The translations under genes were made by a program, and so were the position numbers. Below, one piece after another: positions 5,528 to 52,545 of a stretch of 64,000 nucleotides of DNA (the first letter of the stretch is position 1; the number at the start of each line of letters is the position of its first letter). The DNA is from Ranitomeya imitator. Its lineage: Eukaryota. Below the pieces are notes generated by a model. The model made no database searches. It was not told where the DNA came from and was given only the letters and a program-made list of their open reading frames with translations. The DNA is taken from NCBI RefSeq assembly GCF_032444005.1, contig NC_091288.1:198648001-198712000 (forward strand), given 5' to 3'.

Positions 5528-5591
5528 GTGTGGGTGGCTCTTATAGTGAGGGTGTAGGTGGCTCTTATAGGGAGGGTGTGGGTGGCTCTTA
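5528..5591 (-). repeat. 24-bp tandem triplication of the H2B stem-loop 3' arm plus spacer
   Basis: GTGT(G/A)GGTGGCTCTTA at 5528, 5552 and 5576 (period 24). Confidence 0.9.
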
Positions 5592-12208: not shown

Positions 12209-13046
12209 CCCTCTCCTCTAGTATCAGTGACACTTATTACACTGCTGATCTGGGCTGTGCAGATGTGATGTTGTGCACTATATATACTATGTACAGCTGT
12301 GTTCTCTGTGTAGACGCTGGATTTTGTGTCTCCGCTTTTCTCCCAATATTCCCCTTTTACACAATAGTGGGGGTCACATAAATCCATTAATATTTCAGTT
12401 TTCTCCCCGGAGATGTTTATGTGTTTGGTTGGGGAGTCGCAGTGTGCAGCTGTCGCCTCATCAGAGCTCTTCGCACCATGACAGGCCGCAGCGGTCACAG
12501 CTTCACACTGGGTAAGACACGATATCAGGCAGGTGATTGCAATCAGCCACCGATGTGGATCATCTACTGGTGTGGAACACGTGTCCCCCCAATCCTCTGC
12601 ACATACGGGGTACAGTGACACCACAGGTCAGGGAGGTGGCAGTCAGCGGAGGCCGTCGCCTGTGTTACCCTTCTGGGTTGTCAGCAGCTCCAGCTCGTCC
12701 CCACATCGTACAATCAGCTTCCTGTGCGATAGACATAGGAGTAAAGATCCCTGTGATGGTGACAGGAGCCGGGAATAGGAGGAACGAGCTCCCGCAGCAG
12801 ATTTATCTCCCCGGATACACAGTGATGTGCAGATCGGGAGGACGGCGGCGATGATCCCGGGATTTCCTCTCCGCTCTTTCCCGGCATCTCTGCTAGTGAC
12901 GGCTACAAATGGCCGGTGGAGATGTTGGAGAAGGGGAGGCGACGGAGGAATCGCGCTCTGCTGTCCGGTGTTAGCCGGTAAAGGGCTTTTATCCCGGGCA
13001 GGGAAGCACAAGGGGAGAGCGGAGCTTCACTCGGACTCAGCTGGGA

Positions 13047-13138
13047 GGGGGCGGGGCCTGTGTCCAGTGTCAGCCAATAGAAGCTCAGGACGGTGCTGCT
13101 CAGCAGCCAATCAGTGCGCAGTAAGCCTGTACATATAA
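13047..13138 (+). promoter_or_regulatory. H1 promoter: GC box, two CCAAT boxes, CATATAA
   Basis: GGGGGCGGGG ~13047; CCAAT ~13074 and ~13107; ACATATAAC ~13131. Confidence 0.7.
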
Positions 13139-13215
13139 CAGGCGCCTCCAGCTCCGGCCTCAGTGCTTTCCTTCCTATCAGGAAATATTTTCATTTTGTA
13201 TTTCCGCAGCACATG

Positions 13216-13839
13216 ATGGCAGAGACCGCGCCAGCCGCCGCTCCCCCTCCCGCAGAACCGGCCGCCAAATCCAAGAAGCAGCCGAAGAAATCTGCTGCCA
13301 AGAAGAGCAATAAACCCTCCGGCCCCAGCGTCTCCGAGCTGATCGTGAAAGCCGTGTCCGCCTCCAAGGAGCGCAGCGGGGTGTCTCTGGCCGCCCTGAA
13401 GAAGGCTCTGTCTGCTGGAGGATACGATGTAGAGAAGAACAACAGCCGCCTGAAGCTGGCCGTCAGGTCTCTGGTCACCAAGGGCGCCCTCCTCCAGGTG
13501 AAGGGCAGCGGCGCCTCCGGGTCCTTTAAGCTGAACAAGAAGCAGGAGACGAAGGACAAAGTGGCCAAGACGAAGCCAGCAGCTGCGGCCAAACCTAAGA
13601 AACCCGCTGCTGCCAAGAAAGCCGCCAAATCTCCGAAGAAGCCCAAGAAGGCTCCGACTGCGGCCAAGAAGAGCCCGAAAAAGGCCAAGAAGCCCGCAGC
13701 GGCCAAGAGCCCCAAGAAGCCGAAAGCCGCTCCCAAGCCCAAGAAGGTGACGAAGAGTCCGGCGAAGAAGGCGGCCAAACCCGCCAAGAGTCCGGCTAAG
13801 AAGGCTGCGAAAGCCAAGAAGCCCGCGGCTAAGAAATAA
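13216..13839 (+). CDS. H1: Linker histone H1, 207 aa (alternative ATG at 13213)
   Basis: MAETAPAA...[30 protein letters not shown]...[13 protein letters not shown] plus a K/A/P-rich tail; the ATG at 13216 has the better Kozak context. Confidence 0.97.
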
Positions 13840-13867
13840 GCTGCAGCCCCTGTTCTGTTACCACAAA

Positions 13868-13883
13868 GGCTCTTATAAGAGCC
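13868..13883 (+). terminator. Histone 3' stem-loop of H1 (GGCTCT-TATA-AGAGCC); HDE AGAGCTGTA at 13900-13908
   Basis: Follows the stop codon by ~28 nt; flanked by CACAAA and ACCAC. Confidence 0.93.
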
Positions 13884-16800
13884 ACCACCTCCTCCCCGCA
13901 GAGCTGTATGATCAGTGCCACCACCTCCTCCCCGCAGAGCTGTATGATCATAGCCACCCTCTCCTCCCTGCAGAGCTGTATGATCAGAGAAATCACCTCC
14001 TCCCCGCAGAGCTGTATGATCAGAGCCACCATCTCCTCCCCGCAGAGCTGTATGATCAGTGCCACCACTTCCTCCCCGCAGAGCTGTATGATCAGAGCCA
14101 CCACCTCCTCCCCGCAGAGATGTATGATCAGAGCCACCACCTCCTCCCCGCAGAGATGTATGATCAGAGCCACCACCTCCTCCCTGCAGAGCTGTATGAT
14201 CAGAGAAATCACCTCCTCCCCGCAGAGCTGTATGATCAGTGCCACCACCTCCTCCCCGCAGAGCTGTATGATCAGTGCCACCTCCTCCTCCCCGCAGAGC
14301 TGTATGATCAGTGCCACCACCTCCTCCCCGCAGAGCTGTATGATCAGTGCCACCACCTCCTCCCCGCAGAGCTGTATGATCAGTGCCACCACCTCCTCCC
14401 CGCAGAGCTGTATGATCAGTGCCACCTCCTCCTCCCCGCAGAGCTGTATGATCAGAGCCACCACCTCTTCCCTGCAGAGCTGTATGATCAGAGAAATCAC
14501 CTCCTCCCCGCACAGCTGTATGATCAATACCACCACCTCCTCCCCGCAGAGCTGTATGATCAGAGCCACCACCTCCTCCCCGCAGGGCTGTATGATCAGT
14601 GCCACCACCTCCTCCCCGCACAGCTGTATGATCAGTGCCACCAACTCCTCCCCGCAGAGCTGCATGATCAGAGCCACCACCTCCTCCCCGCAGAGCTGTA
14701 TGATCAGAGCCACCACCTCCTCCCCGCAGAGCTGTATGATCAGTGCCACCACCTCCTCCCCGCAGAGCTGTATCATCAGTGCCACCACCTACTCCTCCCT
14801 GCAGAGCTGTATGATCAGAGAAATCACCTCCACCCCGCAGAGCTGTATGATCAGTGCCACCACCTCCTCCCCGCAGAGCTGTATCATCAGTGCCACCACC
14901 TACTCCTCCCTGCAGAGCTGTATGATCAGAGAAATCACCTCCACCCCGCAGAGCTGTATGATCAGTGCCACCACCTTCTCCCCCGCAGAGCTGTATGATC
15001 AGAGCCACCACTTCCTCCCCGCAGAGCTGTATAATCAGTGCCACCACCTCCACCCCGCAGAGCTGTATGATCAGAGAAATCACCTCCACCCCGCAGAGCT
15101 GTATGATCAGAGCCACCACCTCCTCCCCGCAGAGCTGTATGATCAGAGCCAACACCCTCTCCCCGCAGAGCTGTATAATCAGTGCCACCACCTCCTCCCC
15201 GCAGAGCTGTATGATCAGTGCCACCACCCTCTCCCCGCAGAGCTGTATAATCAGTGCCACCACCTCCTCCCCGCAGAGCTGTATGATCAGTATGATCAGA
15301 GCTGTATGATCAGAGAAATCACCTCCTCCCCGCACAGCTGTATGATCAGTACCACCACCTCCTCCCCGCAGAGCTGTATGATCAGAGCCACCACCTCCTC
15401 CCCGCAGAGCTGTATGATCAGAGCCACCACTTCCTCCCCGCAGAGCTGTATAATCAGTGCCACCACCTCCACCCCGCAGAGCTGTATGATCAGAGAAATC
15501 ACCTCCACCCCGCAGAGCTGTATGATCAGAGCCACCACCTCCTCCCCGCAGAGCTGTATGATCAGAGCCACCACCCTCTCCCCGCAGAGCTGTATAATCA
15601 GTGCCACTACCTCCTCCCCGCAGAGCTGTATGATCAGTGCCACCACCTCCTCACCGCAGAGCTGTATGATCAGTGCCACCACCTCCTCCCCGCAGAGCTG
15701 TATGATCAGTGCCACCTCCTCCTCCCCGCAGAGCTGTATGATCAGTGCCACCTCCTCCTCCCCGCAGAGCTGTATGATCAGAGCCACCACCTCCTCCCTG
15801 CAGAGCTGTATGATCAGAGAAATCACCTCCTCCCCGCACAGCTGTATGATCAGTACCACCACCTCCTCCCCGCAGAGCTGTATGATCAGAGCCACCACCT
15901 CCTCCCCGCAGAGCTGTATGATCAGAGCCACCACCTCCTCCCCGCAGAGCTGTATGATCAGAGCCACCTCCTCCTCCCCGCAGAGCTGTATGATCAGTGC
16001 CACCACCTCCTCCCCGCAGAGCTGTATGATCAGTGTCACCACCTCCTCCCCGCAGAGCTGTATGATCAGTGCCACCACCTCCTCCCCGCAGAGCTGTATG
16101 ATCAGTGCCACCTCCTCCTCCCCGCAGAGCTGTATGATCAGAGCCACCACCTCCTCCCCGCAGAGCTGTATGATCAGAGCCACCACCTCCTCCCTGCAGA
16201 GCTGTATGATCAGAGAAATCACCTCCTCCCCGCAGAGCTGTATGATCAGTGCCACCACCTCCTCCCCGCAGAGCTGTATCATCAGTGCCACCACCTACTC
16301 CTCCCTGCAGAGCTGTATGATCAGAGAAATCACCTCCACCCCGCAGAGCTGTATGATCAGTGCCACCACCTTCTCCCCCGCAGAGCTGTATGATCAGAGC
16401 CACCACTTCCTCCCCGCAGAGCTGTATAATCAGTGCCACCACCTCCACCCCGCAGAGCTGTATGATCAGAGAAATCACCTCCACCCCGCAGAGCTGTATG
16501 ATCAGAGCCACCACCTCCTCCCCGCAGAGCTGTATGATCAGAGCCACCACCCTCTCCCCGCAGAGCTGTATAATCAGTGCCACCACCTCCTCCCCGCAGA
16601 GCTGTATGATCAGTGCCACCACCCTCTCCCCGCAGAGCTGTATAATCAGTGCCACCACCTCCTCCCCGCAGAGCTGTATGATCAGTATGATCAGAGCTGT
16701 ATGATCAGAGAAATCACCTCCTCCCCGCACAGCTGTATGATCAGTACCACCACCTCCTCCCCGCAGAGCTGTATGATCAGAGCCACCACCTCCTCCCCGC

Positions 16801-19800
16801 AGAGCTGTATGATCAGAGCCACCACTTCCTCCCCGCAGAGCTGTATAATCAGTGCCACCACCTCCACCCCGCAGAGCTGTATGATCAGAGAAATCACCTC
16901 CACCCCGCAGAGCTGTATGATCAGAGCCACCACCTCCTCCCCGCAGAGCTGTATGATCAGAGCCACCACCCTCTCCCCGCAGAGCTGTATAATCAGTGCC
17001 ACCACCTCCTCCCCGCAGAGCTGTATGATCAGTGCCACCACTTCCTCACCGCAGAGCTGTATGATCAGTGCCACCACCTCCTCCCCGCAGAGCTGTATGA
17101 TCAGTGCCACCTCCTCCTCCCCGCAGAGCTGTATGATCAGTGCCACCTCCTCCTCCCCGCAGAGCTGTATGATCAGAGCCACCACCTCCTCCCTGCAGAG
17201 CTGTATGATCAGAGAAATCACCTCCTCCCCGCACAGCTGTATGATCAGTACCACCACCTCCTCCCCGCAGAGCTGTATGATCAGAGCCACCACCTCCTCC
17301 CCGCAGAGCTGTATGATCAGAGCCACCACCTCCTCCCCGCAGAGCTGTATGATCAGAGCCACCTCCTCCTCCCCGCAGAGCTGTATGATCAGTGCCACCA
17401 CCTCCTCCCCGCAGAGCTGTATGATCAGTGCCACCACCTCCTCCCCGCAGAGCTGTATGATCAGTGCCACCACCTCCTCCCCGCAGAGCTGTATGATCAG
17501 TGCCACCTCCTCCTCCCCGCAGAGCTGTATGATCAGAGCCACCACCTCCTCCCCGCAGAGCTGTATGATCAGAGCCACCACCTCCTCCCTGCAGAGCTGT
17601 ATGATCAGAGAAATCACCTCCTCCCCGCACAGCTGTATGATCAGTACCACCACCTCCTCCCCGCAGAGCTGTATGATCAGAGCCACCACCTCCTCCCCGC
17701 AGAGCTGTATGATCAGAGCCACCACCTCCTCCCTGCAGAGCTGTATGATCAGAGAAATCACCTCCTCCCCGCAGAGCTGTATGATCAGTGCCACCACCTC
17801 CTCCCCGCAGAGCTGTATGATCAGTGCCACCACCTCCTCCCCGCAGAGCTGTATGATCAGTGCCACCACCTCCTCCCCGCAGAGCTGTATGATCAGTGCC
17901 ACCACCTCCTCCCCGCAGAGCTGTATGATCAGTGCCACCTCCTCCTCCCCGCAGAGCTGCATGATCAGTGCCACCACCTCCTCCCCGCAGAGCTGTATGA
18001 TCAGTGCCACCACCTCCTCCCCGCAGAGCTGTATGATCAGTGCCATCACCTCCTCCCCGCAGAGCTGTATGATCAGTGCCACCTCAACCTCCCCGCAGAG
18101 CTGTATGATCAGAGCCACCACCTCCTCCCTGCAGAGCTGTATGATCAGAGAAATCACCTCCTCCCCGCACAGCTGTATGATCAGTGCCACCACCTCCTCC
18201 CCGCAGAGCTGCATGATCAGAGCCACCACCTCCTCTCCGCAGAGCTGTATGATCAGAGCCACCACCTCCTCCCTGCAGAGCTGTGTGATCAGAGAAATCA
18301 CCTCCTCCCCGGAGAGCCGTATGATCAGTGCCACCACCTTCTCCCCGCAGAGCTGTATGATCAGAGCCACCACATTCTCCTCGCAGAGCTGTAGGATTAG
18401 AGCCATCACCTCCTCCCCGCAGAGCTGTATGATCAGTGCCACCACCCTCTCCCCGCAGAGCTGTATGATCAGAGCCACCACCTACTCCCCTCAGACCTGT
18501 ATGATCAGAGCCATAACCTCCTCCTCCCTGCAGAGCTGTATGATCAGAGAAATCACCTCCTCCCCGGAGAGCTGTATGATCAGTGCCAACACCTTCTCCC
18601 CGCAGAGCTGTATGATCAGTGCCATCACCTCCTCCCTGCAGAGCTGTATGATCAGTGCCACCACCTCCTCCACGCAGAGCTGTACGATCAGTGCCACCAC
18701 CTCCTCCCCGCAGAGCTGTATGATCAGTGCCACCACTTCCTCCCCGCAGAGCTGTATGATCAGTGCCACCACCTCCTCCCCGCAGAGCTGTATGATCAGT
18801 GCCACCACCTCCTCCCCGCAGAGCTGTATGATCAGTGCCACCTCCTCCTCCCCGCAGAGCTGTATGATCAGTGCCACCACCTCCTCCCCGCAGAGCTGTA
18901 TCATCAGTGCCACCACCTACTCCTCCCTGCAGAGCTGTCTGATCAGAGAAATCACCTCCACCCCGCAGAGCTGTATGATCAGTGCCACCACCTTCTCCCC
19001 CGCAGAGCTGTATGATCAGTGCCACCACCTCCTCCCCGCAGAGCTGTATGATCAGAGCCACCACCTCCTCCCTGCAGAGCTGTATGATCAGAGAAATCAC
19101 CTCCTCCCCGCACAGCTGTATGATCAGTGCCACCACCTCCTCCCCGCAGAGCTGTATGATCAGTGCCACCACCTCCTCCCCGCACAGCTGTATGATCAGT
19201 GCCACCACCTCCTCCCCGCAGAGCTGCATGATCAGAGCCACCACCTCCTCCCCGCAGAGCTGTATGATCAGAGCCACCACCTCCTCCCTGCAGAGCTGTA
19301 TGATCAGAGAAATCACCTCCTCCCCGGAGAGCCGTATGATCAGTGCCACCACCTTCTCCCCGCAGAGCTGTATGATCAGTGCCACCACCTCCTCCCCGCA
19401 GAGCTGTATGATCAGTGCCACCACCTCCTCCCCGCAGAGCTGTATGATCAGTGCCACCACCTCCTCCCCGCAGAGCTGTATGATCAGTGCCACCTCCTCC
19501 TCCCCGCAGAGCTGTATGATCAGAGCCACCACCTCCTCCCTGCAGAGCTGTATGATCAGAGAAATCACCTCCTCCCCGCACAGCTGTATGATCAGTGCCA
19601 CCACCTCCTCCCCGCAGAGCTGTATGATCAGTGCCACCACCTCCTCCCCGCAGAGCTGTATGATCAGTGCCACCTCCTCCTCCCCGCAGAGCTGTATGAT
19701 CAGAGCCACCACCTCCTCCCCGCAGAGCTGTATGATCAGTGCCACCACCTCCTCCCCGCAGAGCTGTATCATCAGTGCCACCACCTACTCCTCCCTGCAG

Positions 19801-22800
19801 AGCTGTATGATCAGAGAAATCACCTCCACCCCGCAGAGCTGTATGATCAGTGCCACCACCTCCTCCCCGCAGAGCTGTATGATCAGAGAAATCACCTCCA
19901 CCCCGCAGAGCTGTATGATCAGTGCCACCACCTTCTCCCCCGCAGAGCTGTATGATCAGAGCCACCACTTCCTCCCCGCAGAGCTGTATGATCAGTGCCA
20001 CCTCCTCCTCCCCGCAGAGCTGTATGATCAGAGCCACCACCTCCTCCCTGCAGAGCTGTATGATCAGAGAAATCACCTCCTCCCCGCACAGCTGTATGAT
20101 CAGTGCCACCACCTCCTCCCCGCAGAGCTGTATGATCAGTGCCACCACCTCCTCCCCGCAGAGCTGTATGATCAGAGAAATCACCTCCACCCCGCAGAGC
20201 TGTATGATCAGTGCCACCACCTCCTCCCCGCAGAGCTGTATGATCAGAGAAATCACCTCCACCCCGCAGAGCTGTATGATCAGTGCCACCACCTTCTCCC
20301 CCGCAGAGCTGTATGATCAGAGCCACCACTTCCTCCCCGCAGAGCTGTATGATCAGTGCCACCTCCTCCTCCCCGCAGAGCTGTATGATCAGAGCCACCA
20401 CCTCCTCCCTGCAGAGCTGTATGATCAGAGAAATCACCTCCTCCCCGCACAGCTGTATGATCAGTGCCACCACCTCCTCCCCGCAGAGCTGTATGATCAG
20501 TGCCACCACCTCCTCCCCGCAGAGCTGTATGATCAGTGCCACCTCCTCCTCCCCGCAGAGCTGTATGATCAGAGCCACCACCTCCTCCCCGCAGAGCTGT
20601 ATGATCAGTGCCACCACCTCCTCCCCGCAGAGCTGTATGATCAGTGCCACCACCTCCTCCCCGCAGAGCTGTATGATCAGTGCCACCTCCTCCTCCCCGC
20701 AGAGCTGTATGATCAGAGCCACCACCTCCTCCCCGCAGAGCTGTATGATCAGAGCCACCACCTCCTCCCTGCAGAGCTGTATGATCAGAGAAATCACCTC
20801 CTCCCCGCACAGCTGTATGATCAGTACCACCACCTCCTCCCCGCAGAGCTGTATGATCAGAGCCACCACCTCCTCCCCGCAGAGCTGTATGATCAGAGCC
20901 ACCACCTCCTCCCTGCAGAGCTGTATGATCAGAGAAATCACCTCCTCCCCGCAGAGCTGTATGATCAGTGCCACCACCTCCTCCCCGCAGAGCTGTATGA
21001 TCAGTGCCACCACCTCCTCCCCGCAGAGCTGTATGATCAGTGCCACCACCTCCTCCCCGCAGAGCTGTATGATCAGTGCCACCACCTCCTCCCCGCAGAG
21101 CTGTATGATCAGTGCCACCTCCTCCTCCCCGCAGAGCTGCATGATCAGTGCCACCACCTCCTCCCCGCAGAGCTGTATGATCAGTGCCACCACCTCCTCC
21201 CCGCAGAGCTGTATGATCAGTGCCATCACCTCCTCCCCGCAGAGCTGTATGATCAGTGCCACCTCAACCTCCCCGCAGAGCTGTATGATCAGAGCCACCA
21301 CCTCCTCCCTGCAGAGCTGTATGATCAGAGAAATCACCTCCTCCCCGCACAGCTGTATGATCAGTGCCACCACCTCCTCCCCGCAGAGCTGCATGATCAG
21401 AGCCACCACCTCCTCTCCGCAGAGCTGTATGATCAGAGCCACCACCTCCTCCCTGCAGAGCTGTGTGATCAGAGAAATCACCTCCTCCCCGGAGAGCCGT
21501 ATGATCAGTGCCACCACCTTCTCCCCGCAGAGCTGTATGATCAGAGCCACCACATTCTCCTCGCAGAGCTGTAGGATTAGAGCCATCACCTCCTCCCCGC
21601 AGAGCTGTATGATCAGTGCCACCACCCTCTCCCCGCAGAGCTGTATGATCAGAGCCACCACCTACTCCCCTCAGACCTGTATGATCAGAGCCATAACCTC
21701 CTCCTCCCTGCAGAGCTGTATGATCAGAGAAATCACCTCCTCCCCGGAGAGCTGTATGATCAGTGCCAACACCTTCTCCCCGCAGAGCTGTATGATCAGT
21801 GCCATCACCTCCTCCCTGCAGAGCTGTATGATCAGTGCCACCACCTCCTCCACGCAGAGCTGTACGATCAGTGCCACCACCTCCTCCCCGCAGAGCTGTA
21901 TGATCAGTGCCACCACTTCCTCCCCGCAGAGCTGTATGATCAGTGCCACCACCTCCTCCCCGCAGAGCTGTATGATCAGTGCCACCACCTCCTCCCCGCA
22001 GAGCTGTATGATCAGTGCCACCTCCTCCTCCCCGCAGAGCTGTATGATCAGTGCCACCACCTCCTCCCCGCAGAGCTGTATCATCAGTGCCACCACCTAC
22101 TCCTCCCTGCAGAGCTGTCTGATCAGAGAAATCACCTCCACCCCGCAGAGCTGTATGATCAGTGCCACCACCTTCTCCCCCGCAGAGCTGTATGATCAGT
22201 GCCACCACCTCCTCCCCGCAGAGCTGTATGATCAGAGCCACCACCTCCTCCCTGCAGAGCTGTATGATCAGAGAAATCACCTCCTCCCCGCACAGCTGTA
22301 TGATCAGTGCCACCACCTCCTCCCCGCAGAGCTGTATGATCAGTGCCACCACCTCCTCCCCGCACAGCTGTATGATCAGTGCCACCACCTCCTCCCCGCA
22401 GAGCTGCATGATCAGAGCCACCACCTCCTCCCCGCAGAGCTGTATGATCAGAGCCACCACCTCCTCCCTGCAGAGCTGTATGATCAGAGAAATCACCTCC
22501 TCCCCGGAGAGCCGTATGATCAGTGCCACCACCTTCTCCCCGCAGAGCTGTATGATCAGTGCCACCACCTCCTCCCCGCAGAGCTGTATGATCAGTGCCA
22601 CCACCTCCTCCCCGCAGAGCTGTATGATCAGTGCCACCACCTCCTCCCCGCAGAGCTGTATGATCAGTGCCACCTCCTCCTCCCCGCAGAGCTGTATGAT
22701 CAGAGCCACCACCTCCTCCCTGCAGAGCTGTATGATCAGAGAAATCACCTCCTCCCCGCACAGCTGTATGATCAGTGCCACCACCTCCTCCCCGCAGAGC

Positions 22801-25800
22801 TGTATGATCAGTGCCACCACCTCCTCCCCGCAGAGCTGTATGATCAGTGCCACCTCCTCCTCCCCGCAGAGCTGTATGATCAGAGCCACCACCTCCTCCC
22901 CGCAGAGCTGTATGATCAGTGCCACCACCTCCTCCCCGCAGAGCTGTATCATCAGTGCCACCACCTACTCCTCCCTGCAGAGCTGTATGATCAGAGAAAT
23001 CACCTCCACCCCGCAGAGCTGTATGATCAGTGCCACCACCTCCTCCCCGCAGAGCTGTATGATCAGAGAAATCACCTCCACCCCGCAGAGCTGTATGATC
23101 AGTGCCACCACCTTCTCCCCCGCAGAGCTGTATGATCAGAGCCACCACTTCCTCCCCGCAGAGCTGTATAATCAGTGCCACCACCTCCACCCCGCAGAGC
23201 TGTATGATCAGAGAAATCACCTCCACCCCGCAGAGCTGTATGATCAGAGCCACCACCTCCTCCCCGCAGAGCTGTATGATCAGAGCCACCACCCTCTCCC
23301 CGCAGAGCTGTATAATCAGTGCCACCACCTCCTCCCCGCAGAGCTGTATGATCAGTGCCACCACCTCCTCCCCGCAGAGCTGTATGATCAGTGCCACCAC
23401 CTCCTCCCCGCAGAGCTGTATGATCAGTGCCACCTCCTTATCCCCGCAGAGCTGTATGATCAGAGAAATCACCTCCACCCCGCAGAGCTGTATGATCAGT
23501 GCCACCACCTCCTCCCCGCAGAGCTGTATCATCAGTGCCACCACCTACTCCTCCCCGCAGAGCTGTATGATCAGAGAAATCACCTCCACCCCGCAGAGCT
23601 GTATGATCAGTGCCACCACCTTCTCCCCCGCAGAGCTGTATGATCAGTGCCACCACCTCCTCCCCGCAGAGCTGTATGATCAGTGCCACCTCCTCCTCCC
23701 CGCAGAGCTGTATGATCAGAGCCACCTCCTCCTCCCCGCAGAGCTGTATGATCAGTGCCACCACCTCCTCCCCGCAGAGCTGTATGATCAGTGCCACCAC
23801 CTCCTCCCCGCAGAGCTGTACGATCAGTGCCACCACCTCCTCCCCGCAGAGCTGTATGATCAGTGCCACCTCCTCCTCCCCGCAGAGCTGTATGATCAGA
23901 GCCACCACCTCCTCCCCGCAGAGCTGTATGATCAGAGCCACCACCTCCTCCCTGCAGAGCTGTATGATCAGAGAAATCACCTCCTCCCCGCACAGCTGTA
24001 TGATCAGTACCACCACCTCCTCCCCGCAGAGCAGTATGATCAGAGCCACCACCTCCTCCCCGCAGAGCTGTATGATCAGTGCCACCACCTCCTCCCCGCA
24101 GAGCTGTATGATCAGTGCCACCTCCTCCTCCCCGCAGAGCTGTATGATCAGAGAAATCACCTCCACCCCGCAGAGCTGTATGATCAGTGCCACCACCTCC
24201 TCCCCGCAGAGCTGTATCATCAGTGCCACCACCTACTCCTCCCTGCAGAGCTGTATGATCAGAGAAATCACCTCCACCCCGCAGAGCTGTATGATCAGTG
24301 CCACCACCTTCTCCCCCGCAGAGCTGTATGATCAGAGCCACCACTTCCTCCCCGCAGAGCTGTATAATCAGTGCCACCACCTCCACCCCGCAGAGCTGTA
24401 TGATCAGAGAAATCACCTCCACCCCGCAGAGCTGTATGATCAGAGCCACCACCTCCTCCCCGCAGAGCTGTATGATCAGAGCCACCACCCTCTCCCCGCA
24501 GAGCTGTATAATCAGTGCCACCACCTCCTCCCCGCAGAGCTGTATGATCAGTGCCACCACCTCCTCCCCGCAGAGCTGTATGATCAGTGCCACCACCTCC
24601 TCCCCGCAGAGCTGTATGATCAGTGCCACCTCCTCCTCCCCGCAGAGCTGTATGATCAGAGCCACCTCCTCCTCCCCGCAGAGCTGTATGATCAGTGCCA
24701 CCACCTCCTCCCCGCAGAGCTGTATGATCAGTGCCACCACCTCCTCCCCGCAGAGCTGTATGATCAGTGCCACCACCTCCTCCCCGCAGAGCTGTATGAT
24801 CAGTGCCACCTCCTCCTCCCCGCAGAGCTGTATGATCAGTGCCACCACCTTCTCCCCCGCAGAGCTGTATGATCAGAGCCACCACTTCCTCCCCGCAGAG
24901 CTGTATAATCAGTGCCACCACCTCCACCCCGCAGAGCTGTATGATCAGAGAAATCACCTCCACCCCGCAGAGCTGTATGATCAGAGCCACCACCTCCTCC
25001 CCGCAGAGCTGTATGATCAGAGCCAACACCCTCTCCCCGCAGAGCTGTATAATCAGTGCCACCACCTCCTCCCCGCAGAGCTGTATGATCAGTGCCACCA
25101 CCCTCTCCCCGCAGAGCTGTATAATCAGTGCCACCACCTCCTCCCCGCAGAGCTGTATGATCAGTATGATCAGAGCTGTATGATCAGAGAAATCACCTCC
25201 TCCCCGCACAGCTGTATGATCAGTACCACCACCTCCTCCCCGCAGAGCTGTATGATCAGAGCCACCACCTCCTCCCCGCAGAGCTGTATGATCAGAGCCA
25301 CCACTTCCTCCCCGCAGAGCTGTATAATCAGTGCCACCACCTCCACCCCGCAGAGCTGTATGATCAGAGAAATCACCTCCACCCCGCAGAGCTGTATGAT
25401 CAGAGCCACCACCTCCTCCCCGCAGAGCTGTATGATCAGAGCCACCACCCTCTCCCCGCAGAGCTGTATAATCAGTGCCACTACCTCCTCCCCGCAGAGC
25501 TGTATGATCAGTGCCACCACCTCCTCACCGCAGAGCTGTATGATCAGTGCCACCACCTCCTCCCCGCAGAGCTGTATGATCAGTGCCACCTCCTCCTCCC
25601 CGCAGAGCTGTATGATCAGTGCCACCTCCTCCTCCCCGCAGAGCTGTATGATCAGAGCCACCACCTCCTCCCTGCAGAGCTGTATGATCAGAGAAATCAC
25701 CTCCTCCCCGCACAGCTGTATGATCAGTACCACCACCTCCTCCCCGCAGAGCTGTATGATCAGAGCCACCACCTCCTCCCCGCAGAGCTGTATGATCAGA

Positions 25801-28800
25801 GCCACCACCTCCTCCCCGCAGAGCTGTATGATCAGAGCCACCTCCTCCTCCCCGCAGAGCTGTATGATCAGTGCCACCACCTCCTCCCCGCAGAGCTGTA
25901 TGATCAGTGTCACCACCTCCTCCCCGCAGAGCTGTATGATCAGTGCCACCACCTCCTCCCCGCAGAGCTGTATGATCAGTGCCACCTCCTCCTCCCCGCA
26001 GAGCTGTATGATCAGAGCCACCACCTCCTCCCCGCAGAGCTGTATGATCAGAGCCACCACCTCCTCCCTGCAGAGCTGTATGATCAGAGAAATCACCTCC
26101 TCCCCGCAGAGCTGTATGATCAGTGCCACCACCTCCTCCCCGCAGAGCTGTATCATCAGTGCCACCACCTACTCCTCCCTGCAGAGCTGTATGATCAGAG
26201 AAATCACCTCCACCCCGCAGAGCTGTATGATCAGTGCCACCACCTTCTCCCCCGCAGAGCTGTATGATCAGAGCCACCACTTCCTCCCCGCAGAGCTGTA
26301 TAATCAGTGCCACCACCTCCACCCCGCAGAGCTGTATGATCAGAGAAATCACCTCCACCCCGCAGAGCTGTATGATCAGAGCCACCACCTCCTCCCCGCA
26401 GAGCTGTATGATCAGAGCCACCACCCTCTCCCCGCAGAGCTGTATAATCAGTGCCACCACCTCCTCCCCGCAGAGCTGTATGATCAGTGCCACCACCCTC
26501 TCCCCGCAGAGCTGTATAATCAGTGCCACCACCTCCTCCCCGCAGAGCTGTATGATCAGTATGATCAGAGCTGTATGATCAGAGAAATCACCTCCTCCCC
26601 GCACAGCTGTATGATCAGTACCACCACCTCCTCCCCGCAGAGCTGTATGATCAGAGCCACCACCTCCTCCCCGCAGAGCTGTATGATCAGAGCCACCACT
26701 TCCTCCCCGCAGAGCTGTATAATCAGTGCCACCACCTCCACCCCGCAGAGCTGTATGATCAGAGAAATCACCTCCACCCCGCAGAGCTGTATGATCAGAG
26801 CCACCACCTCCTCCCCGCAGAGCTGTATGATCAGAGCCACCACCCTCTCCCCGCAGAGCTGTATAATCAGTGCCACCACCTCCTCCCCGCAGAGCTGTAT
26901 GATCAGTGCCACCACTTCCTCACCGCAGAGCTGTATGATCAGTGCCACCACCTCCTCCCCGCAGAGCTGTATGATCAGTGCCACCTCCTCCTCCCCGCAG
27001 AGCTGTATGATCAGTGCCACCTCCTCCTCCCCGCAGAGCTGTATGATCAGAGCCACCACCTCCTCCCTGCAGAGCTGTATGATCAGAGAAATCACCTCCT
27101 CCCCGCACAGCTGTATGATCAGTACCACCACCTCCTCCCCGCAGAGCTGTATGATCAGAGCCACCACCTCCTCCCCGCAGAGCTGTATGATCAGAGCCAC
27201 CACCTCCTCCCCGCAGAGCTGTATGATCAGAGCCACCTCCTCCTCCCCGCAGAGCTGTATGATCAGTGCCACCACCTCCTCCCCGCAGAGCTGTATGATC
27301 AGTGCCACCACCTCCTCCCCGCAGAGCTGTATGATCAGTGCCACCACCTCCTCCCCGCAGAGCTGTATGATCAGTGCCACCTCCTCCTCCCCGCAGAGCT
27401 GTATGATCAGAGCCACCACCTCCTCCCCGCAGAGCTGTATGATCAGAGCCACCACCTCCTCCCTGCAGAGCTGTATGATCAGAGAAATCACCTCCTCCCC
27501 GCACAGCTGTATGATCAGTACCACCACCTCCTCCCCGCAGAGCTGTATGATCAGAGCCACCACCTCCTCCCCGCAGAGCTGTATGATCAGAGCCACCACC
27601 TCCTCCCTGCAGAGCTGTATGATCAGAGAAATCACCTCCTCCCCGCAGAGCTGTATGATCAGTGCCACCACCTCCTCCCCGCAGAGCTGTATGATCAGTG
27701 CCACCACCTCCTCCCCGCAGAGCTGTATGATCAGTGCCACCACCTCCTCCCCGCAGAGCTGTATGATCAGTGCCACCACCTCCTCCCCGCAGAGCTGTAT
27801 GATCAGTGCCACCTCCTCCTCCCCGCAGAGCTGCATGATCAGTGCCACCACCTCCTCCCCGCAGAGCTGTATGATCAGTGCCACCACCTCCTCCCCGCAG
27901 AGCTGTATGATCAGTGCCATCACCTCCTCCCCGCAGAGCTGTATGATCAGTGCCACCTCAACCTCCCCGCAGAGCTGTATGATCAGAGCCACCACCTCCT
28001 CCCTGCAGAGCTGTATGATCAGAGAAATCACCTCCTCCCCGCACAGCTGTATGATCAGTGCCACCACCTCCTCCCCGCAGAGCTGCATGATCAGAGCCAC
28101 CACCTCCTCTCCGCAGAGCTGTATGATCAGAGCCACCACCTCCTCCCTGCAGAGCTGTGTGATCAGAGAAATCACCTCCTCCCCGGAGAGCCGTATGATC
28201 AGTGCCACCACCTTCTCCCCGCAGAGCTGTATGATCAGAGCCACCACATTCTCCTCGCAGAGCTGTAGGATTAGAGCCATCACCTCCTCCCCGCAGAGCT
28301 GTATGATCAGTGCCACCACCCTCTCCCCGCAGAGCTGTATGATCAGAGCCACCACCTACTCCCCTCAGACCTGTATGATCAGAGCCATAACCTCCTCCTC
28401 CCTGCAGAGCTGTATGATCAGAGAAATCACCTCCTCCCCGGAGAGCTGTATGATCAGTGCCAACACCTTCTCCCCGCAGAGCTGTATGATCAGTGCCATC
28501 ACCTCCTCCCTGCAGAGCTGTATGATCAGTGCCACCACCTCCTCCACGCAGAGCTGTACGATCAGTGCCACCACCTCCTCCCCGCAGAGCTGTATGATCA
28601 GTGCCACCACTTCCTCCCCGCAGAGCTGTATGATCAGTGCCACCACCTCCTCCCCGCAGAGCTGTATGATCAGTGCCACCACCTCCTCCCCGCAGAGCTG
28701 TATGATCAGTGCCACCTCCTCCTCCCCGCAGAGCTGTATGATCAGTGCCACCACCTCCTCCCCGCAGAGCTGTATCATCAGTGCCACCACCTACTCCTCC

Positions 28801-31800
28801 CTGCAGAGCTGTCTGATCAGAGAAATCACCTCCACCCCGCAGAGCTGTATGATCAGTGCCACCACCTTCTCCCCCGCAGAGCTGTATGATCAGTGCCACC
28901 ACCTCCTCCCCGCAGAGCTGTATGATCAGAGCCACCACCTCCTCCCTGCAGAGCTGTATGATCAGAGAAATCACCTCCTCCCCGCACAGCTGTATGATCA
29001 GTGCCACCACCTCCTCCCCGCAGAGCTGTATGATCAGTGCCACCACCTCCTCCCCGCACAGCTGTATGATCAGTGCCACCACCTCCTCCCCGCAGAGCTG
29101 CATGATCAGAGCCACCACCTCCTCCCCGCAGAGCTGTATGATCAGAGCCACCACCTCCTCCCTGCAGAGCTGTATGATCAGAGAAATCACCTCCTCCCCG
29201 GAGAGCCGTATGATCAGTGCCACCACCTTCTCCCCGCAGAGCTGTATGATCAGTGCCACCACCTCCTCCCCGCAGAGCTGTATGATCAGTGCCACCACCT
29301 CCTCCCCGCAGAGCTGTATGATCAGTGCCACCACCTCCTCCCCGCAGAGCTGTATGATCAGTGCCACCTCCTCCTCCCCGCAGAGCTGTATGATCAGAGC
29401 CACCACCTCCTCCCTGCAGAGCTGTATGATCAGAGAAATCACCTCCTCCCCGCACAGCTGTATGATCAGTGCCACCACCTCCTCCCCGCAGAGCTGTATG
29501 ATCAGTGCCACCACCTCCTCCCCGCAGAGCTGTATGATCAGTGCCACCTCCTCCTCCCCGCAGAGCTGTATGATCAGAGCCACCACCTCCTCCCCGCAGA
29601 GCTGTATGATCAGTGCCACCACCTCCTCCCCGCAGAGCTGTATCATCAGTGCCACCACCTACTCCTCCCTGCAGAGCTGTATGATCAGAGAAATCACCTC
29701 CACCCCGCAGAGCTGTATGATCAGTGCCACCACCTCCTCCCCGCAGAGCTGTATGATCAGAGAAATCACCTCCACCCCGCAGAGCTGTATGATCAGTGCC
29801 ACCACCTTCTCCCCCGCAGAGCTGTATGATCAGAGCCACCACTTCCTCCCCGCAGAGCTGTATAATCAGTGCCACCACCTCCACCCCGCAGAGCTGTATG
29901 ATCAGAGAAATCACCTCCACCCCGCAGAGCTGTATGATCAGAGCCACCACCTCCTCCCCGCAGAGCTGTATGATCAGAGCCACCACCCTCTCCCCGCAGA
30001 GCTGTATAATCAGTGCCACCACCTCCTCCCCGCAGAGCTGTATGATCAGTGCCACCACCTCCTCCCCGCAGAGCTGTATGATCAGTGCCACCACCTCCTC
30101 CCCGCAGAGCTGTATGATCAGTGCCACCTCCTTATCCCCGCAGAGCTGTATGATCAGAGAAATCACCTCCACCCCGCAGAGCTGTATGATCAGTGCCACC
30201 ACCTCCTCCCCGCAGAGCTGTATCATCAGTGCCACCACCTACTCCTCCCCGCAGAGCTGTATGATCAGAGAAATCACCTCCACCCCGCAGAGCTGTATGA
30301 TCAGTGCCACCACCTTCTCCCCCGCAGAGCTGTATGATCAGTGCCACCTCCTCCTCCCCGCAGAGCTGTATGATCAGTGCCACCTCCTCCTCCCCGCAGA
30401 GCTGTATGATCAGAGCCACCACCTCCTCCCTGCAGAGCTGTATGATCAGAGAAATCACCTCCTCCCCGCACAGCTGTATGATCAGTACCACCACCTCCTC
30501 CCCGCAGAGCTGTATGATCAGAGCCACCACCTCCTCCCCGCAGAGCTGTATGATCAGAGCCACCACCTCCTCCCCGCAGAGCTGTATGATCAGAGCCACC
30601 TCCTCCTCCCCGCAGAGCTGTATGATCAGTGCCACCACCTCCTCCCCGCAGAGCTGTATGATCAGTGCCACCACCTCCTCCCCGCAGAGCTGTATGATCA
30701 GTGCCACCACCTCCTCCCCGCAGAGCTGTATGATCAGTGCCACCTCCTCCTCCCCGCAGAGCTGTATGATCAGAGCCACCACCTCCTCCCCGCAGAGCTG
30801 TATGATCAGAGCCACCACCTCCTCCCTGCAGAGCTGTATGATCAGAGAAATCACCTCCTCCCCGCACAGCTGTATGATCAGTACCACCACCTCCTCCCCG
30901 CAGAGCTGTATGATCAGAGCCACCACCTCCTCCCCGCAGAGCTGTATGATCAGAGCCACCACCTCCTCCCTGCAGAGCTGTATGATCAGAGAAATCACCT
31001 CCTCCCCGCAGAGCTGTATGATCAGTGCCACCACCTCCTCCCCGCAGAGCTGTATGATCAGTGCCACCACCTCCTCCCCGCAGAGCTGTATGATCAGTGC
31101 CACCACCTCCTCCCCGCAGAGCTGTATGATCAGTGCCACCACCTCCTCCCCGCAGAGCTGTATGATCAGTGCCACCTCCTCCTCCCCGCAGAGCTGCATG
31201 ATCAGTGCCACCACCTCCTCCCCGCAGAGCTGTATGATCAGTGCCACCACCTCCTCCCCGCAGAGCTGTATGATCAGTGCCATCACCTCCTCCCCGCAGA
31301 GCTGTATGATCAGTGCCACCTCAACCTCCCCGCAGAGCTGTATGATCAGAGCCACCACCTCCTCCCTGCAGAGCTGTATGATCAGAGAAATCACCTCCTC
31401 CCCGCACAGCTGTATGATCAGTGCCACCACCTCCTCCCCGCAGAGCTGCATGATCAGAGCCACCACCTCCTCTCCGCAGAGCTGTATGATCAGAGCCACC
31501 ACCTCCTCCCTGCAGAGCTGTGTGATCAGAGAAATCACCTCCTCCCCGGAGAGCCGTATGATCAGTGCCACCACCTTCTCCCCGCAGAGCTGTATGATCA
31601 GAGCCACCACATTCTCCTCGCAGAGCTGTAGGATTAGAGCCATCACCTCCTCCCCGCAGAGCTGTATGATCAGTGCCACCACCCTCTCCCCGCAGAGCTG
31701 TATGATCAGAGCCACCACCTACTCCCCTCAGACCTGTATGATCAGAGCCATAACCTCCTCCTCCCTGCAGAGCTGTATGATCAGAGAAATCACCTCCTCC

Positions 31801-34800: not shown

Positions 34801-35944
34801 CTCCCCGCAGAGCTGTATGATCAGTGCCACCACCTCCTCCCCGCAGAGCTGTATGATCAGTGCCACCTCCTCCTCCCCGCAGAGCTGTATGATCAGAGCC
34901 ACCACCTCCTCCCCGCAGAGCTGTATGATCAGAGCCACCACCTCCTCCCTGCAGAGCTGTATGATCAGAGAAATCACCTCCTCCCCGCACAGCTGTATGA
35001 TCAGTACCACCACCTCCTCCCCGCAGAGCTGTATGATCAGAGCCACCACCTCCTCCCCGCAGAGCTGTATGATCAGAGCCACCACCTCCTCCCTGCAGAG
35101 CTGTATGATCAGAGAAATCACCTCCTCCCCGCAGAGCTCTATGATCAGTGCCACCACCTCCTCCCCGCAGAGCTGTATGATCAGTGCCACCACCTCCTCC
35201 CCGCAGAGCTGTATGATCAGTGCCACCACCTCCTCCCCGCAGAGCTGTATGATCAGTGCCACCACCTCCTCCCTGCAGAGCTGTATGATCAGAGAAATCA
35301 CCTCCTCCCCGCACAGCTGTATGATCAGTACCACCACCTCCTCCCTGCAGAGCTGTATGATCAGAGAAATCACCTCCTCCCCGCACAGCTGTATGATCAG
35401 TACCACCACCTCCTCCCCGCAGAGCTGTATGATCAGTGCCACCACCTCCTCCCCGCACAGCTGTATGATCAGTGCCACCACCTCCTCCCCGCAGAGCTGC
35501 ATGATCAGAGCCACCACCTCCTCTCCGCAGAGCTGTATGATCAGAGCCACCACCTCCTCCCTGCAGAGCTGTATGATCAGAGAAATCACCTCCTCCCCGG
35601 AGAGCCGTATGATCAGTGCCACCACCTTCTCCCCGCAGAGCTGTATGATCAGAGCCACCACATTCTCCCCGCAGAGCTGTAGGATCAGAGCCATCACCTC
35701 CTCCCCGCAGAGCTGTATGATCAGTGCCACCACCCTCTCCCCGCAGAGCTGTATGATCAGAGCCACCACCTACTCCCCTCAGACCTGTATGATCAGAGCC
35801 ATAACCTCATCCTCCCTGCAGAGCTGTATGATCAGAGAAATCACCTCCTCCCCGGAGAGCTGTATGATCAGTGCCAACACCTTCTCCCCGCAGAGCTGTA
35901 TCATCAGTGCCACCACCTCCTCCCCGCAGAGCTGTATGATCAGT
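13878..35944 (+). repeat. 36-bp satellite (~610 units) derived from the H1 3'-processing cassette: AG(A/T)GCCACCACCTCCTCCCCGCAGAGCTGTATGATC
   Basis: The first unit begins in the 3' arm of the H1 stem-loop; 22,067 bp / 36; variants include 37- and 39-bp units and AGAGAAATC units. Confidence 0.97.
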
Positions 35945-36112
35945 TTTCCTACTTGTAATGTTTTTAATATAACTGATGCTGGGCGCAGTCTCAGGATGGG
36001 GGGTTTGTGTGATCTGACGATAATGTGGGAGCTGCACTGTACAGCGCTATACACGGGGACATTTCAACGCAGATACATCAGCTGCTCCAGCAGCGGCAAA
36101 TGAGTGATCTGA

Positions 36113-36760
<648 letters not shown>

Positions 36761-51918: not shown

Positions 51919-52545
<627 letters not shown>

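What the first reader, a model, noticed from the sequence alone, without database searches (positions are those of the whole stretch)
13878..35944. A 22-kb satellite built from the H1 mRNA 3'-processing cassette: about 610 tandem U7 snRNP-binding sites
Seen: the array starts inside the H1 stem-loop. Each 36-bp unit consists of the stem 3' arm (AGAGCC/AGTGCC), the ACCAC cleavage flank, a pyrimidine spacer and GCAGAGCTGTA, with only the first unit having the 5' arm. AGAGCTGTA is retained in the great majority of units, while variation is concentrated in the arm and spacer. The array pushes H1 and H3 from ~0.5 kb to ~22.5 kb apart. Established: the HDE pairs with U7 snRNA (5' region ...UUACAGCUCUUU...) to direct CPSF73 cleavage and degradation of the downstream product; U7 snRNP concentrates in histone locus bodies; newt histone clusters are interspersed with satellite DNA that is read through in lampbrush loops, but I do not know of a satellite made from the HDE itself. 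Inference: read-through RNA would be a multivalent U7 scaffold or sponge, or a fail-safe terminator array shielding the H3 promoter, possibly relevant to histone locus body nucleation in oocytes. Neutral expansion remains possible.
Basis: partly seen in the sequence, partly recalled or inferred. Interest (0 to 1): 0.9.

Follow-up and report, generated by a model that had tools for sequence, protein, structure and literature searches.

The report
Satellite grown from H1 mRNA-cutting signal
Behind a poison-frog histone H1 gene, the 36-letter signal that marks where the H1 message is cut has been copied head-to-tail about 612 times (22 kb); the array is real and is entered by transcription, but it behaves like a fast-changing repeat and nothing shows it is a purpose-built dock for the U7 cutting machinery.

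Summary
A 36-bp unit is repeated 612-613 times at 13878-35944. It starts at the 3' arm of the H1 stem-loop. Each unit carries the ACCAC cleavage flank, a pyrimidine spacer and AGAGCTGTA, which is exact in 87% of units.

A second, inverted array of at least 263 units lies at 52714-62224 and is cut by a CR1-like LINE. The genome is Ranitomeya imitator-like. This scan already noted the same satellite at ten or more other H1 loci of this genome, with 17 to about 890 units.

The evidence favours a young satellite that turns over quickly:
- Array 1 has only 62 unit types and is a mosaic of exact multi-kb copies, up to 5,046 bp.
- The two arrays are heavily rearranged although their flanks are 99% identical.
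- H1 copies without an array exist.
- The H3 behind array 2 has lost its ATG.
- The H2B 3' end carries a separate 24-bp triplication that also starts in its stem-loop.

The HDE is only weakly protected: 13 mutation events against 21-22 expected (p about 0.03-0.04). By unit frequency it is no better kept than the neighbouring TATGATCAG. Internal units lack the stem-loop and pair with U7 over only 9 bp.

RNA-library contigs run from the H1 coding sequence into the units, so read-through is likely. Neither U7 binding nor any function is shown.

The parts
13040..13165 (+). H1 promoter region, with two CCAAT motifs and a TATA-like tacatataac
   Evidence: Read from the sequence. RNA-library contigs begin at about 13182-13202 and there is no coverage at 13150-13178.
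13216..13839 (+). Histone H1 coding sequence (207 aa, H1.01-like)
   Evidence: ORF and translation. It is 94-98% identical to Ranitomeya variabilis and R. imitator H1. The exact protein is on record in GCA_032444005.1.
13868..13883 (+). H1 3' stem-loop, GGCTCT TATA AGAGCC. Its 3' arm (13878-13883) is the first six bases of unit 1.
   Evidence: Sequence. Rfam Histone3 scores 29.9 bits, E 1.5e-6, below the gathering score of 34. Another H1 copy seen in an RNA library has the canonical TTTC loop (13875 A>T, 13877 A>C).
13900..13908 (+). First HDE core, AGAGCTGTA, the only one preceded by a complete stem-loop
   Evidence: Sequence. It forms a 9-bp duplex of -14.0 kcal/mol with the mouse/human-type U7 5' end.
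13878..35944 (+). Array 1: 36-bp unit x 612-613. Each unit holds the stem 3' arm, ACCAC, a pyrimidine spacer, GCAGAGCTGTA and TGATC.
   Evidence: TRF, wrap-around alignment and per-position table, 62 unit types, unit map.
14944..19989 (+). Longest exact internal duplicate, 5,046 bp, identical to 24818-29863. Other exact copies are 3,081, 2,693 and 2,596 bp long.
   Evidence: Exact-run scan at all shifts and shift profile.
35945..36349 (+). Unique spacer between the array end and the H3 ATG, including the H3 promoter. The junction sequence is the same at the end of array 2.
   Evidence: Sequence and alignment of the two array ends, 99% identical.
36350..36760 (+). Histone H3 coding sequence downstream of array 1. 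Its stem-loop is at 36785-36830.
   Evidence: ORF and Rfam Histone3 at 35.1 bits.
52714..62224 (-). Array 2: the same 36-bp satellite in inverted orientation, at least 263 units, with 29 rare unit types
   Evidence: TRF, per-position table, unit map. Shared runs with array 1 are at most 34 units long.
62225..64000 (-). CR1-like LINE with a reverse-transcriptase ORF and an (ATGTTACT)n tail. It is inserted into a unit of array 2 and separates that array from whatever lies upstream.
   Evidence: Sequence of the minus strand. Its 3' fragments recur at 86-572, 38388-38904, 40552-41038 and 49774-50290.
51919..52341 (-). H3 copy behind array 2. A 21-bp deletion removes the ATG, and there is a T-to-P change. 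It is probably a pseudogene.
   Evidence: ORFs and alignment A1.
5528..5591 (-). H2B 3' end: a separate 24-bp repeat x 2.7 (TATA AGAGCC ACCCACAC CCTCCC) that starts in the loop of the H2B stem-loop. A twin lies at 45987-46050.
   Evidence: TRF and sequence.

Best explanation
This is a young, lineage-restricted satellite. It was born by tandem duplication of the 36 bp that run from the 3' arm of the H1 stem-loop to just past the U7-binding HDE.

It then grew and keeps changing by unequal exchange of single units and of multi-kb blocks. Because it lies directly in the path of H1 read-through, its first units at least are transcribed in the sense direction.

The units still look like U7 targets because they are recent copies that are continually homogenised, not because each is demonstrably selected. 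Only the first unit, which has the complete stem-loop, is the working H1 processing site. Internal units lack the SLBP site and offer only a 9-bp U7 duplex, so at most they are weak, redundant back-up cleavage sites.

Shown here: the origin, structure, turnover and variability of the array, and the presence of H1-to-unit junctions in RNA libraries. Inferred: the slippage or unequal-exchange mechanism, weak U7 binding, and the lack of a dedicated function.
For: Origin:
- The array starts at the stem's 3' arm, only unit 1 has the 5' arm, and the spacing from cleavage flank to HDE is kept.
- The H2B 3' end in the same cluster carries a separate 24-bp x 2.7 repeat. It also starts inside its stem-loop and has no AGAGCTGT-like HDE core in its unit. 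This points to a mutational hot spot at histone 3' hairpins.

Turnover:
- Array 1 has 62 unit types in 613 units.
- It contains exact duplicates of 5,046, 3,081, 2,693 and 2,596 bp.
- Rare unit types are seen near the array ends.
- Arrays 1 and 2 share runs of at most 34 units, although their flanks are 99.05% identical over 4 kb and end at the same junction.

Dispensability:
- A 919-nt RNA-library contig is an H1 paralog with one unit followed directly by sequence that matches the post-array flank.
- One R. imitator gene model joins H1 and H3 within 2 kb.
- In R. variabilis, H1-to-H3 spacing is 0.9-1.4 kb at one locus, while at another the H1 model spans 13.6 kb. In Phyllobates terribilis it is 1.04 kb.
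- Array 2 carries a LINE and precedes an H3 without its ATG.

Weak constraint:
- The HDE has 13 of 88 inferred events against 21-22 expected (p 0.026-0.04). The tree-free allele count gives p 0.08.
- 14.3% of units are changed in the HDE, against 14.2% in TATGATCAG.
- The HDE-breaking variant CACAGCTGTA was amplified to 39 + 19 copies.

Biochemistry from the literature: substrates need a 15-16 bp duplex to be processed without SLBP, and H2a WT/Ys, which carries the wild-type HDE context, needs SLBP for stable U7 binding (PMC7026596). The frog unit gives 9 bp at -14.0 kcal/mol, against -16.9 for mouse H2a wild type.

Transcription: a 244-nt contig in RNA run X26 spans 13712-13955 at the same depth as the H1 coding-sequence contigs.
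Against: - The HDE 9-mer has the lowest inferred event count of all 36 cyclic 9-nt windows. The deficit is nominally significant for a hypothesis stated in advance, so some constraint cannot be excluded.
- Unit words are 2-10 times deeper than the H1 coding sequence in RNA-library assemblies: 2,100-2,900 against at most 270 in a second species label. That would fit abundant array RNA.
- The sense RNA is predicted to be poorly structured (z +1.34), so the HDEs would be accessible. Hundreds of weak sites could bind U7 cooperatively.
- Arrays sit behind many H1 genes of this genome (earlier notes), so the arrangement has persisted through cluster duplications.
Confidence: 0.65

Rival explanations
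1. Fail-safe terminator or insulator. H1 read-through transcripts are cut by U7 snRNP/CPSF73 at one of hundreds of back-up sites. The 5'-3' exonuclease activity then dislodges Pol II before it reaches the H3 promoter on the same strand.
For: - H1 and H3 lie on the same strand, only about 0.44 kb apart without the array.
- Each unit keeps the cleavage flank and HDE at the normal spacing.
- Read-through past the H1 processing site is seen in RNA-library contigs, both into the array and, in an array-less paralog, for 182 nt beyond the part that fits the window, which ends just past the HDE.
- CPSF73 degrades the downstream product 5' to 3' (PMC7026596).
- The array holds no AATAAA or ATTAAA, so no alternative poly(A) route exists within it.
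Against: - A few units would do the job; 612 are not needed, and sizes range from 17 to about 890 between loci (earlier notes).
- H1 copies with short H1-H3 spacers exist in the same and a sister species.
- Array 2 precedes an H3 that has lost its ATG and is itself interrupted by a LINE.
- Stem-less units with a 9-bp duplex are expected to be poor substrates.
Confidence: 0.15
2. Multivalent U7 snRNP scaffold or sponge. Array RNA binds many U7 snRNPs and so concentrates them at the histone locus (histone locus body or oocyte sphere organelle), or buffers free U7.
For: - 87% of units keep the exact 9-nt complement to the U7 5' end.
- The sense RNA is predicted to be weakly structured.
- Unit words are deep in RNA libraries of at least two species labels.
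- The HDE shows a slight deficit of mutation events.
Against: - No binding data exist.
- The frog's own U7 was not examined.
- The conservation signal is weak and is shared by the adjacent stretch that does not pair with U7.
- There is no SLBP site in internal units.
- Copy number differs about 50-fold between loci and arrays are missing at some H1 genes, which is hard to reconcile with a dosage-sensitive scaffold.
- The deep unit words could partly come from DNA carried over into the RNA libraries. No silent control stretch could be laid (warns of this).
Confidence: 0.1
3. Assembly inflation. The satellite is real, but the 22-kb length and the exact multi-kb duplicates of array 1 are partly products of assembling near-identical repeats.
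For: - Exact copies of up to 5,046 bp lie at shifts of 9,874, 10,057, 6,694 and 3,180 bp.
- Array 1 has almost no private unit types (1 rare type against 29 in array 2), as expected if blocks were laid down more than once.
Against: - The same pattern is what recent unequal exchange produces.
- Arrays of 10-27 kb are reported at other loci of this genome (earlier notes).
- An R. variabilis H1 gene model spans 13.6 kb before H3.
- A separate R. imitator assembly shows H1, stem-loop, unit 1 and unit 2, followed by a 9-kb stretch without genes.
Confidence: 0.1

Closest known systems
Canonical replication-dependent histone 3'-processing signal (stem-loop, ACCCA-type flank, HDE that pairs with U7 snRNA)
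   Same: Unit 1 together with the upstream 5' arm is a normal signal. It has a 6-bp stem, a 4-nt loop (UAUA, which keeps U at loop positions 1 and 3), an ACCAC flank, and AGAGCUGUA 11-12 nt further on, complementary to UACAGCUCU of U7.
   Different: The other 600 or so units lack the 5' arm and therefore the SLBP site. The signal is iterated head-to-tail, which to my knowledge and in the library searched has not been described for any histone gene.
Transcribed satellites of newt histone and lampbrush loci (Notophthalmus satellites 1 and 2)
   Same: Both are tandem repeats close to structural genes that are transcribed by read-through from upstream promoters. The abstract of PMC2114352 says this for satellite 2. 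That satellite 1 separates histone clusters is recalled from memory.
   Different: The newt units are 222-330 bp and unrelated to the processing signal. Here the unit is the processing signal itself, 36 bp long. Lampbrush transcription has not been tested in this frog.
Gene-derived minisatellites and satellites with higher-order block structure (for example 5S-spacer or SINE-derived satellites)
   Same: Shared features are a seed taken from a functional element, growth by unequal exchange, few unit types, block duplications, rare unit types near the ends, and large copy-number differences between loci.
   Different: The seed is an RNA-processing signal lying in a transcribed read-through path, so the copies keep a potential trans-acting RNA-binding site.
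Multivalent architectural or sponge RNAs
   Same: Many identical short binding motifs would sit on one transcript.
   Different: Binding, abundance and localisation are all untested. This is an analogy only.

Membership tests
Histone 3'-processing signal | 16-nt stem-loop (6-bp stem, 4-nt loop) that binds SLBP | tested here: not met
   The stem-loop is present only once, at 13868-13883 (Rfam 29.9 bits). There is no GGCTCT and no stem-loop pattern within 13878-35944. Unit 1 qualifies; the internal units do not.
Histone 3'-processing signal | ACCCA-type cleavage flank immediately after the stem | tested here: met
   ACCAC follows the arm in 418 of 613 units of array 1 and 182 of 265 units of array 2.
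Histone 3'-processing signal | [quoted passage not shown] | tested here: met
   AGAGCTGTA is exact in 86.6% and 83.8% of units, 11-12 nt after the flank. It forms a 9-bp duplex of -14.0 kcal/mol with the mouse/human-type U7 5' end from PMC7026596. The frog's own U7 gene was not available.
Histone 3'-processing signal | U7-dependent cleavage actually occurs at the site | not testable with these tools
   Only assembled contigs of RNA libraries were available, which give no molecule ends and no strand.
Satellite or minisatellite DNA | Long head-to-tail array of a short unit | tested here: met
   36 bp x 612 (22 kb) and x 263 or more (9.5 kb).
Satellite or minisatellite DNA | Homogenisation and turnover by unequal exchange: few variants, block duplications, copy-number differences between loci | tested here: met
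   Array 1 has 62 unit types and exact blocks of up to 5,046 bp. The two arrays are rearranged relative to each other despite 99% identical flanks.
Read-through-transcribed histone-locus satellite (newt type) | Transcripts that continue from a histone gene into the satellite | tested here: inconclusive
   A 244-nt contig in RNA run X26 bridges the H1 coding sequence to unit 2, and unit words occur in RNA libraries of three or more species labels. There is no strand information and no silent-stretch control, so DNA carry-over is not excluded for the unit-only contigs.
Sponge or scaffold RNA for U7 snRNP | Demonstrated multivalent binding of U7 snRNP to the RNA | not testable with these tools
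   This needs pull-down, CLIP or RNA-FISH.
Sponge or scaffold RNA for U7 snRNP | The binding motif is selectively conserved relative to the rest of the unit | tested here: inconclusive
   The HDE has 13 of 88 events against 21-22 expected (p 0.026-0.04). The allele count gives p 0.08. By unit frequency the HDE (14.3% changed) equals TATGATCAG (14.2%).

The most novel reading that the evidence does not exclude
Sense transcripts of the H1-linked arrays act as natural multivalent U7 snRNP platforms. They would concentrate the histone-processing machinery at the histone loci of Ranitomeya oocytes and embryos, helping to nucleate or enlarge the histone locus body, or they would buffer free U7. In that case array length would be a tunable, fast-evolving regulator of histone mRNA 3'-end formation.
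Probability: 0.08. Interest if true: 0.85.

Novelty: new variant of a known kind. Interest (0 to 1): 0.5.

Why it matters
Satellites are common, and transcribed satellites near amphibian histone genes have been known since the newt lampbrush work. A satellite whose unit is itself an RNA-processing signal, with hundreds of correctly spaced U7-complementary sites in the read-through path of a histone gene, appears undescribed.

Even if it is neutral, it shows that histone 3' hairpins can seed tandem repeats; the H2B triplication in the same cluster is a second case. It also gives a natural allelic series for experiments: H1 genes with 0, 17, 50, 150, 260, 600 and about 900 extra sites in one genome. 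That series can be used to ask whether U7 snRNP binds or cuts stem-less HDEs in vivo, how histone read-through is terminated, and whether HDE-bearing RNA contributes to assembly of the histone locus body.

Tried and rejected
1. Coding reading. Four of the six frames of the unit are open and give long ORFs. This is what a 36-bp unit without stop codons produces by chance, and the ORFs run through the H1 3' UTR or antisense to H1, so I rejected it.

2. Structured RNA. The sense multimer folds worse than shuffled sequences (z +1.34) and the antisense only slightly better (z -1.85). Rfam finds nothing in the array apart from the H1 stem-loop.

3. Cross-species DNA. Only gene spacings could be used.

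4. A protein search with the translated array was considered and dropped. Short-read assemblies break the array into contigs of 42-99 nt, too short to give ORFs.

5. Literature. Six completed searches found no paper on a satellite derived from an HDE or stem-loop (only retrieved U7 sequences). Two searches failed on a term that was too short, and one review was not held.

6. Microhomology. AGAGC occurs in both the arm and the HDE, but these lie 22 nt apart and would give a 22-bp period, not 36. The 36-bp junction shares only AG with the downstream flank, so the exact founding event stays unresolved.

7. A silent-stretch control for DNA carry-over in the RNA libraries could not be run.
Full report
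**1. What is there**

The window holds parts of a histone gene cluster from a Ranitomeya-type poison frog. The window's H1 protein is on record in GCA_032444005.1, and the best named relatives are R. variabilis and R. imitator H1.

The gene order is as follows:
- H2A(-) 1007-1399
- H2B(-) near 5600, with its middle masked
- H1(+) 13216-13839
- array 1 (+) 13878-35944
- H3(+) 36350-36760
- H4(+) 39416-39727
- H2A(-) 41473-41865
- H2B(-) near 46100
- H4(-) 48951-49262
- H3(-) about 51919-52341
- array 2 (-) 52714-62224
- a CR1-like LINE (-) 62225-64000

Segment 1-8372 is a direct copy of 40467-48831 (99.7-99.96% identical). Segment 35903-39900 is an inverted copy of 48777-52755 (99.05% identical).

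**2. The observation**

TRF gives period 36, 612.0 copies, 89% matches and score 34620 for 13881-35944. Chance is not an issue at that score.

The H1 stem-loop is GGCTCT TATA AGAGCC at 13868-13883. The array begins with its 3' arm at 13878. Rfam's Histone3 model matches 13863-13909 at 29.9 bits.

A wrap-around alignment splits the array into 613 units. The counts are:
- No 5' arm or stem-loop pattern occurs inside the array.
- AGAGCTGTA is exact in 531 units (86.6%).
- ACCAC follows the arm in 418 units.
- There are 557 BclI sites.
- H1 and H3 are about 22.5 kb apart, about 0.44 kb of which is not array.

**3. Is the HDE specially conserved?**

By frequency, variation is concentrated at positions 3, 5, 6, 8, 10, 14, 16 and 20, in the arm and spacer. 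These frequencies are dominated by a few amplified unit types: array 1 has only 62 distinct units.

I therefore counted inferred mutation events on a minimum spanning tree of the 80 distinct 36-nt unit types from both arrays.
- The HDE takes 13 of 88 events against 22 expected if events were uniform (p 0.026). This is the lowest of all 36 cyclic 9-nt windows; the C-rich spacer is the highest at 31.
- With base-specific rates taken from outside the HDE, the expectation is 21.2 (one-sided Poisson p 0.04).
- The count is stable over 200 trees with random tie-breaking (12-14 events). A tree-free count of alternative alleles gives p 0.08.
- By share of units changed, the HDE (14.3%) cannot be told apart from the neighbouring TATGATCAG (14.2%). 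The low-variation block is the 18-nt GCAGAGCTGTATGATCAG, and only half of it pairs with U7.
- The variant CACAGCTGTA, which breaks the HDE, was amplified to 39 and 19 copies in the two arrays.

Verdict: a weak, inconclusive deficit. It is not the clear signature that a selected binding site would leave.

**4. Dynamics**

The unit map shows array 1 to be a mosaic of long blocks that recur three or four times. Exact copies reach 5,046 bp (14944-19989 = 24818-29863), then 3,081, 2,693 and 2,596 bp. Rare unit types are seen near the ends of the array.

Array 2 ends at the same junction as array 1 and has 99% identical flanks. Yet it shares runs of at most 34 units with array 1, and only 101 of its 265 units lie in shared runs of 8 or more. 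It has 29 rare unit types against 1 in array 1.

This is the behaviour of a satellite under rapid unequal exchange. Alternatively, for the exact blocks only, it could partly reflect assembly inflation, which I could not test.

**5. Dispensability**

- An RNA-library contig of 919 nt is an H1 paralog with a 12-nt insertion. It has a single unit that continues directly into sequence matching the window's post-array flank near 36018. So H1 copies without arrays exist.
- A gene model from a second R. imitator assembly fuses H1 and H3 within 2 kb. Another model from that assembly reads from H1 through the TATA-loop stem-loop into units 1 and 2 (P0004) and is followed by 9 kb without genes.
- In R. 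variabilis, one H1 model spans 13.6 kb before H3, whereas another locus has H1-H3 gaps of 0.9 and 1.4 kb. In Phyllobates terribilis the gap is 1.04 kb.
- Array 2 has accepted a LINE insertion. The H3 behind it lost its ATG through a 21-bp deletion.
- Earlier notes of this scan list the same satellite behind many other H1 genes of this genome, with about 17 to 890 units.

**6. Could the units work?**

Human and mouse U7 begin (C/A)AGUGUUACAGCUCUUUUAG (PMC7026596). The unit pairs with UACAGCUCU over 9 contiguous base pairs at -14.0 kcal/mol. This is the best contiguous duplex among the cluster's genes:

| Substrate | Duplex energy with U7 5' end (kcal/mol) |
|---|---|
| Frog H1 unit | -14.0 (9 contiguous bp) |
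| Frog H4 | -14.2 (irregular pairing) |
| Frog H2A | -11.8 |
| Frog H2B | -7.5 |
| Frog H3 | -7.4 |
| Mouse H2a wild type | -16.9 |

PMC7026596 reports three relevant points:
- Substrates with 15-16 bp duplexes are processed without SLBP.
- H2a WT/Ys, which carries the wild-type HDE context, needs SLBP for stable U7 binding.
- A substrate without the stem-loop is not cut by endogenous U7.

Internal units have no SLBP site, so each should be a weak site at best. The sense multimer is predicted to be poorly structured (z +1.34), so its sites would be accessible, and multivalency could partly compensate. The frog's own U7 was not available.

**7. Transcription**

Only assembled contigs of public runs could be laid, once.
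- In four runs labelled RNA (the label is a guess), H1 coverage begins at about 13182-13202, just downstream of the TATA-like element, as expected for transcripts.
- In X26, a 244-nt contig covers 13712-13955: H1 coding sequence, 3' UTR, a stem-loop with the canonical TTTC loop, unit 1 and unit 2. Its depth (5.5) equals that of the H1 coding-sequence contigs.
- Depth of unit words, per run:

| Run | Unit words | H1 coding sequence |
|---|---|---|
| X25 | 64-75 | 14.5 |
| X26 | 54-83 | 4-17 |
| X8 | 16-18 | 2-37 |
| X20 (another species label; H1 coding sequence about 95% identical) | 2,118-2,893 | at most 270 |

- Array words were also found in RNA runs of two further species labels.

The bridging contig is hard to explain by DNA carry-over, so H1 read-through into the array is likely. 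The unit-only depth could partly be DNA, because the satellite is high-copy. No strand information and no silent control were available.

**8. Mechanism of origin**

The H2B 3' end of the same cluster, in both copies, carries 2.7 copies of a 24-bp unit, TATA AGAGCC ACCCACAC CCTCCC. It starts in the loop of its stem-loop and contains no U7-complementary core.

So there are two separate repeats starting at the same structural point of two different histone genes. This suggests hairpin-associated slippage or template switching as the seeding event, followed by unequal exchange. The exact founding junction of the 36-bp unit shares only AG with the downstream flank and is not resolved.

**9. Comparison and novelty**

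The nearest known things are:
- the canonical histone processing signal, of which unit 1 is a member and the internal units are not;
- the read-through-transcribed satellites of newt lampbrush and histone loci (PMC2114352);
- gene-derived satellites in general.

No paper in the held library describes a satellite built from the HDE cassette.

I class it as a new variant of a known kind. It is a real and curious satellite, most likely a tolerated by-product (confidence 0.65). A fail-safe terminator role (0.15) and a U7 scaffold or sponge role (0.10) remain open and can be tested directly.

Noticed in passing
window 5528-5591 and 45987-46050 (minus strand): The H2B 3' end carries 2.7 copies of a 24-bp unit (TATA AGAGCC ACCCACAC CCTCCC) that begins in the loop of the H2B stem-loop. 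This is a second, separate tandem repeat seeded at a histone 3' hairpin, and its unit has no AGAGCTGT-like HDE core.
   Followed up: partly
window 52240-52370 (minus strand), H3 copy behind array 2: Relative to the H3 at 36350, a 21-bp deletion removes CACGTCAATACGGAGCCATGG, including the start codon. There is also a Thr-to-Pro change. This H3 is probably a pseudogene.
   Followed up: partly
window 62225-64000 (minus strand): A CR1-like LINE with a reverse-transcriptase ORF and an (ATGTTACT)3 tail is inserted inside a unit of array 2. Its 3' fragments of 480-520 bp, 94.7-97.5% identical, recur at 86-572, 38388-38904, 40552-41038 and 49774-50290.
   Followed up: partly
window 13874-13877: The H1 gene next to array 1 has a UAUA loop in its stem-loop. 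An H1 copy seen in an RNA-library contig has the canonical UUUC loop and is also followed by units (13875 A>T, 13877 A>C).
   Followed up: no
window 1-8372 vs 40467-48831; 35903-39900 vs 48777-52755: The window contains a direct duplication (99.7-99.96% identical) and an inverted duplication (99.05% identical) of cluster segments. The histone cluster is therefore being reshuffled on the same short time scale as the arrays.
   Followed up: partly
window 8951-10437 vs 10445-11903; 10119-10433; 11620-11995; 12001-12209: Upstream of H1 lie a tandem duplication of about 1.5 kb (91.5% identical), GA-rich low-complexity tracts, and a 21-bp repeat (ACTGCTGTATATACTGTACAC x 10).
   Followed up: no
every unit of array 1, e.g. 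13884-13903: The spacer plus the start of the HDE (CCACCTCCTCCCCGCAG|AG) looks like a polypyrimidine tract followed by a CAG 3' splice acceptor. The opposite strand (GGGGAGGAGGTGGTGG) has G-runs that could form two-tetrad quadruplexes. Either feature could affect read-through RNA or replication.
   Followed up: no
R. variabilis protein P0001, gene map: The annotated H1.01-like model splices from the end of H1 across about 13 kb to a short exon. The peptide of that exon (…SYQSRPHLLLEKLHL…) looks like a translated, degenerate unit. This suggests an array at that locus too, but no DNA was available.
   Followed up: no
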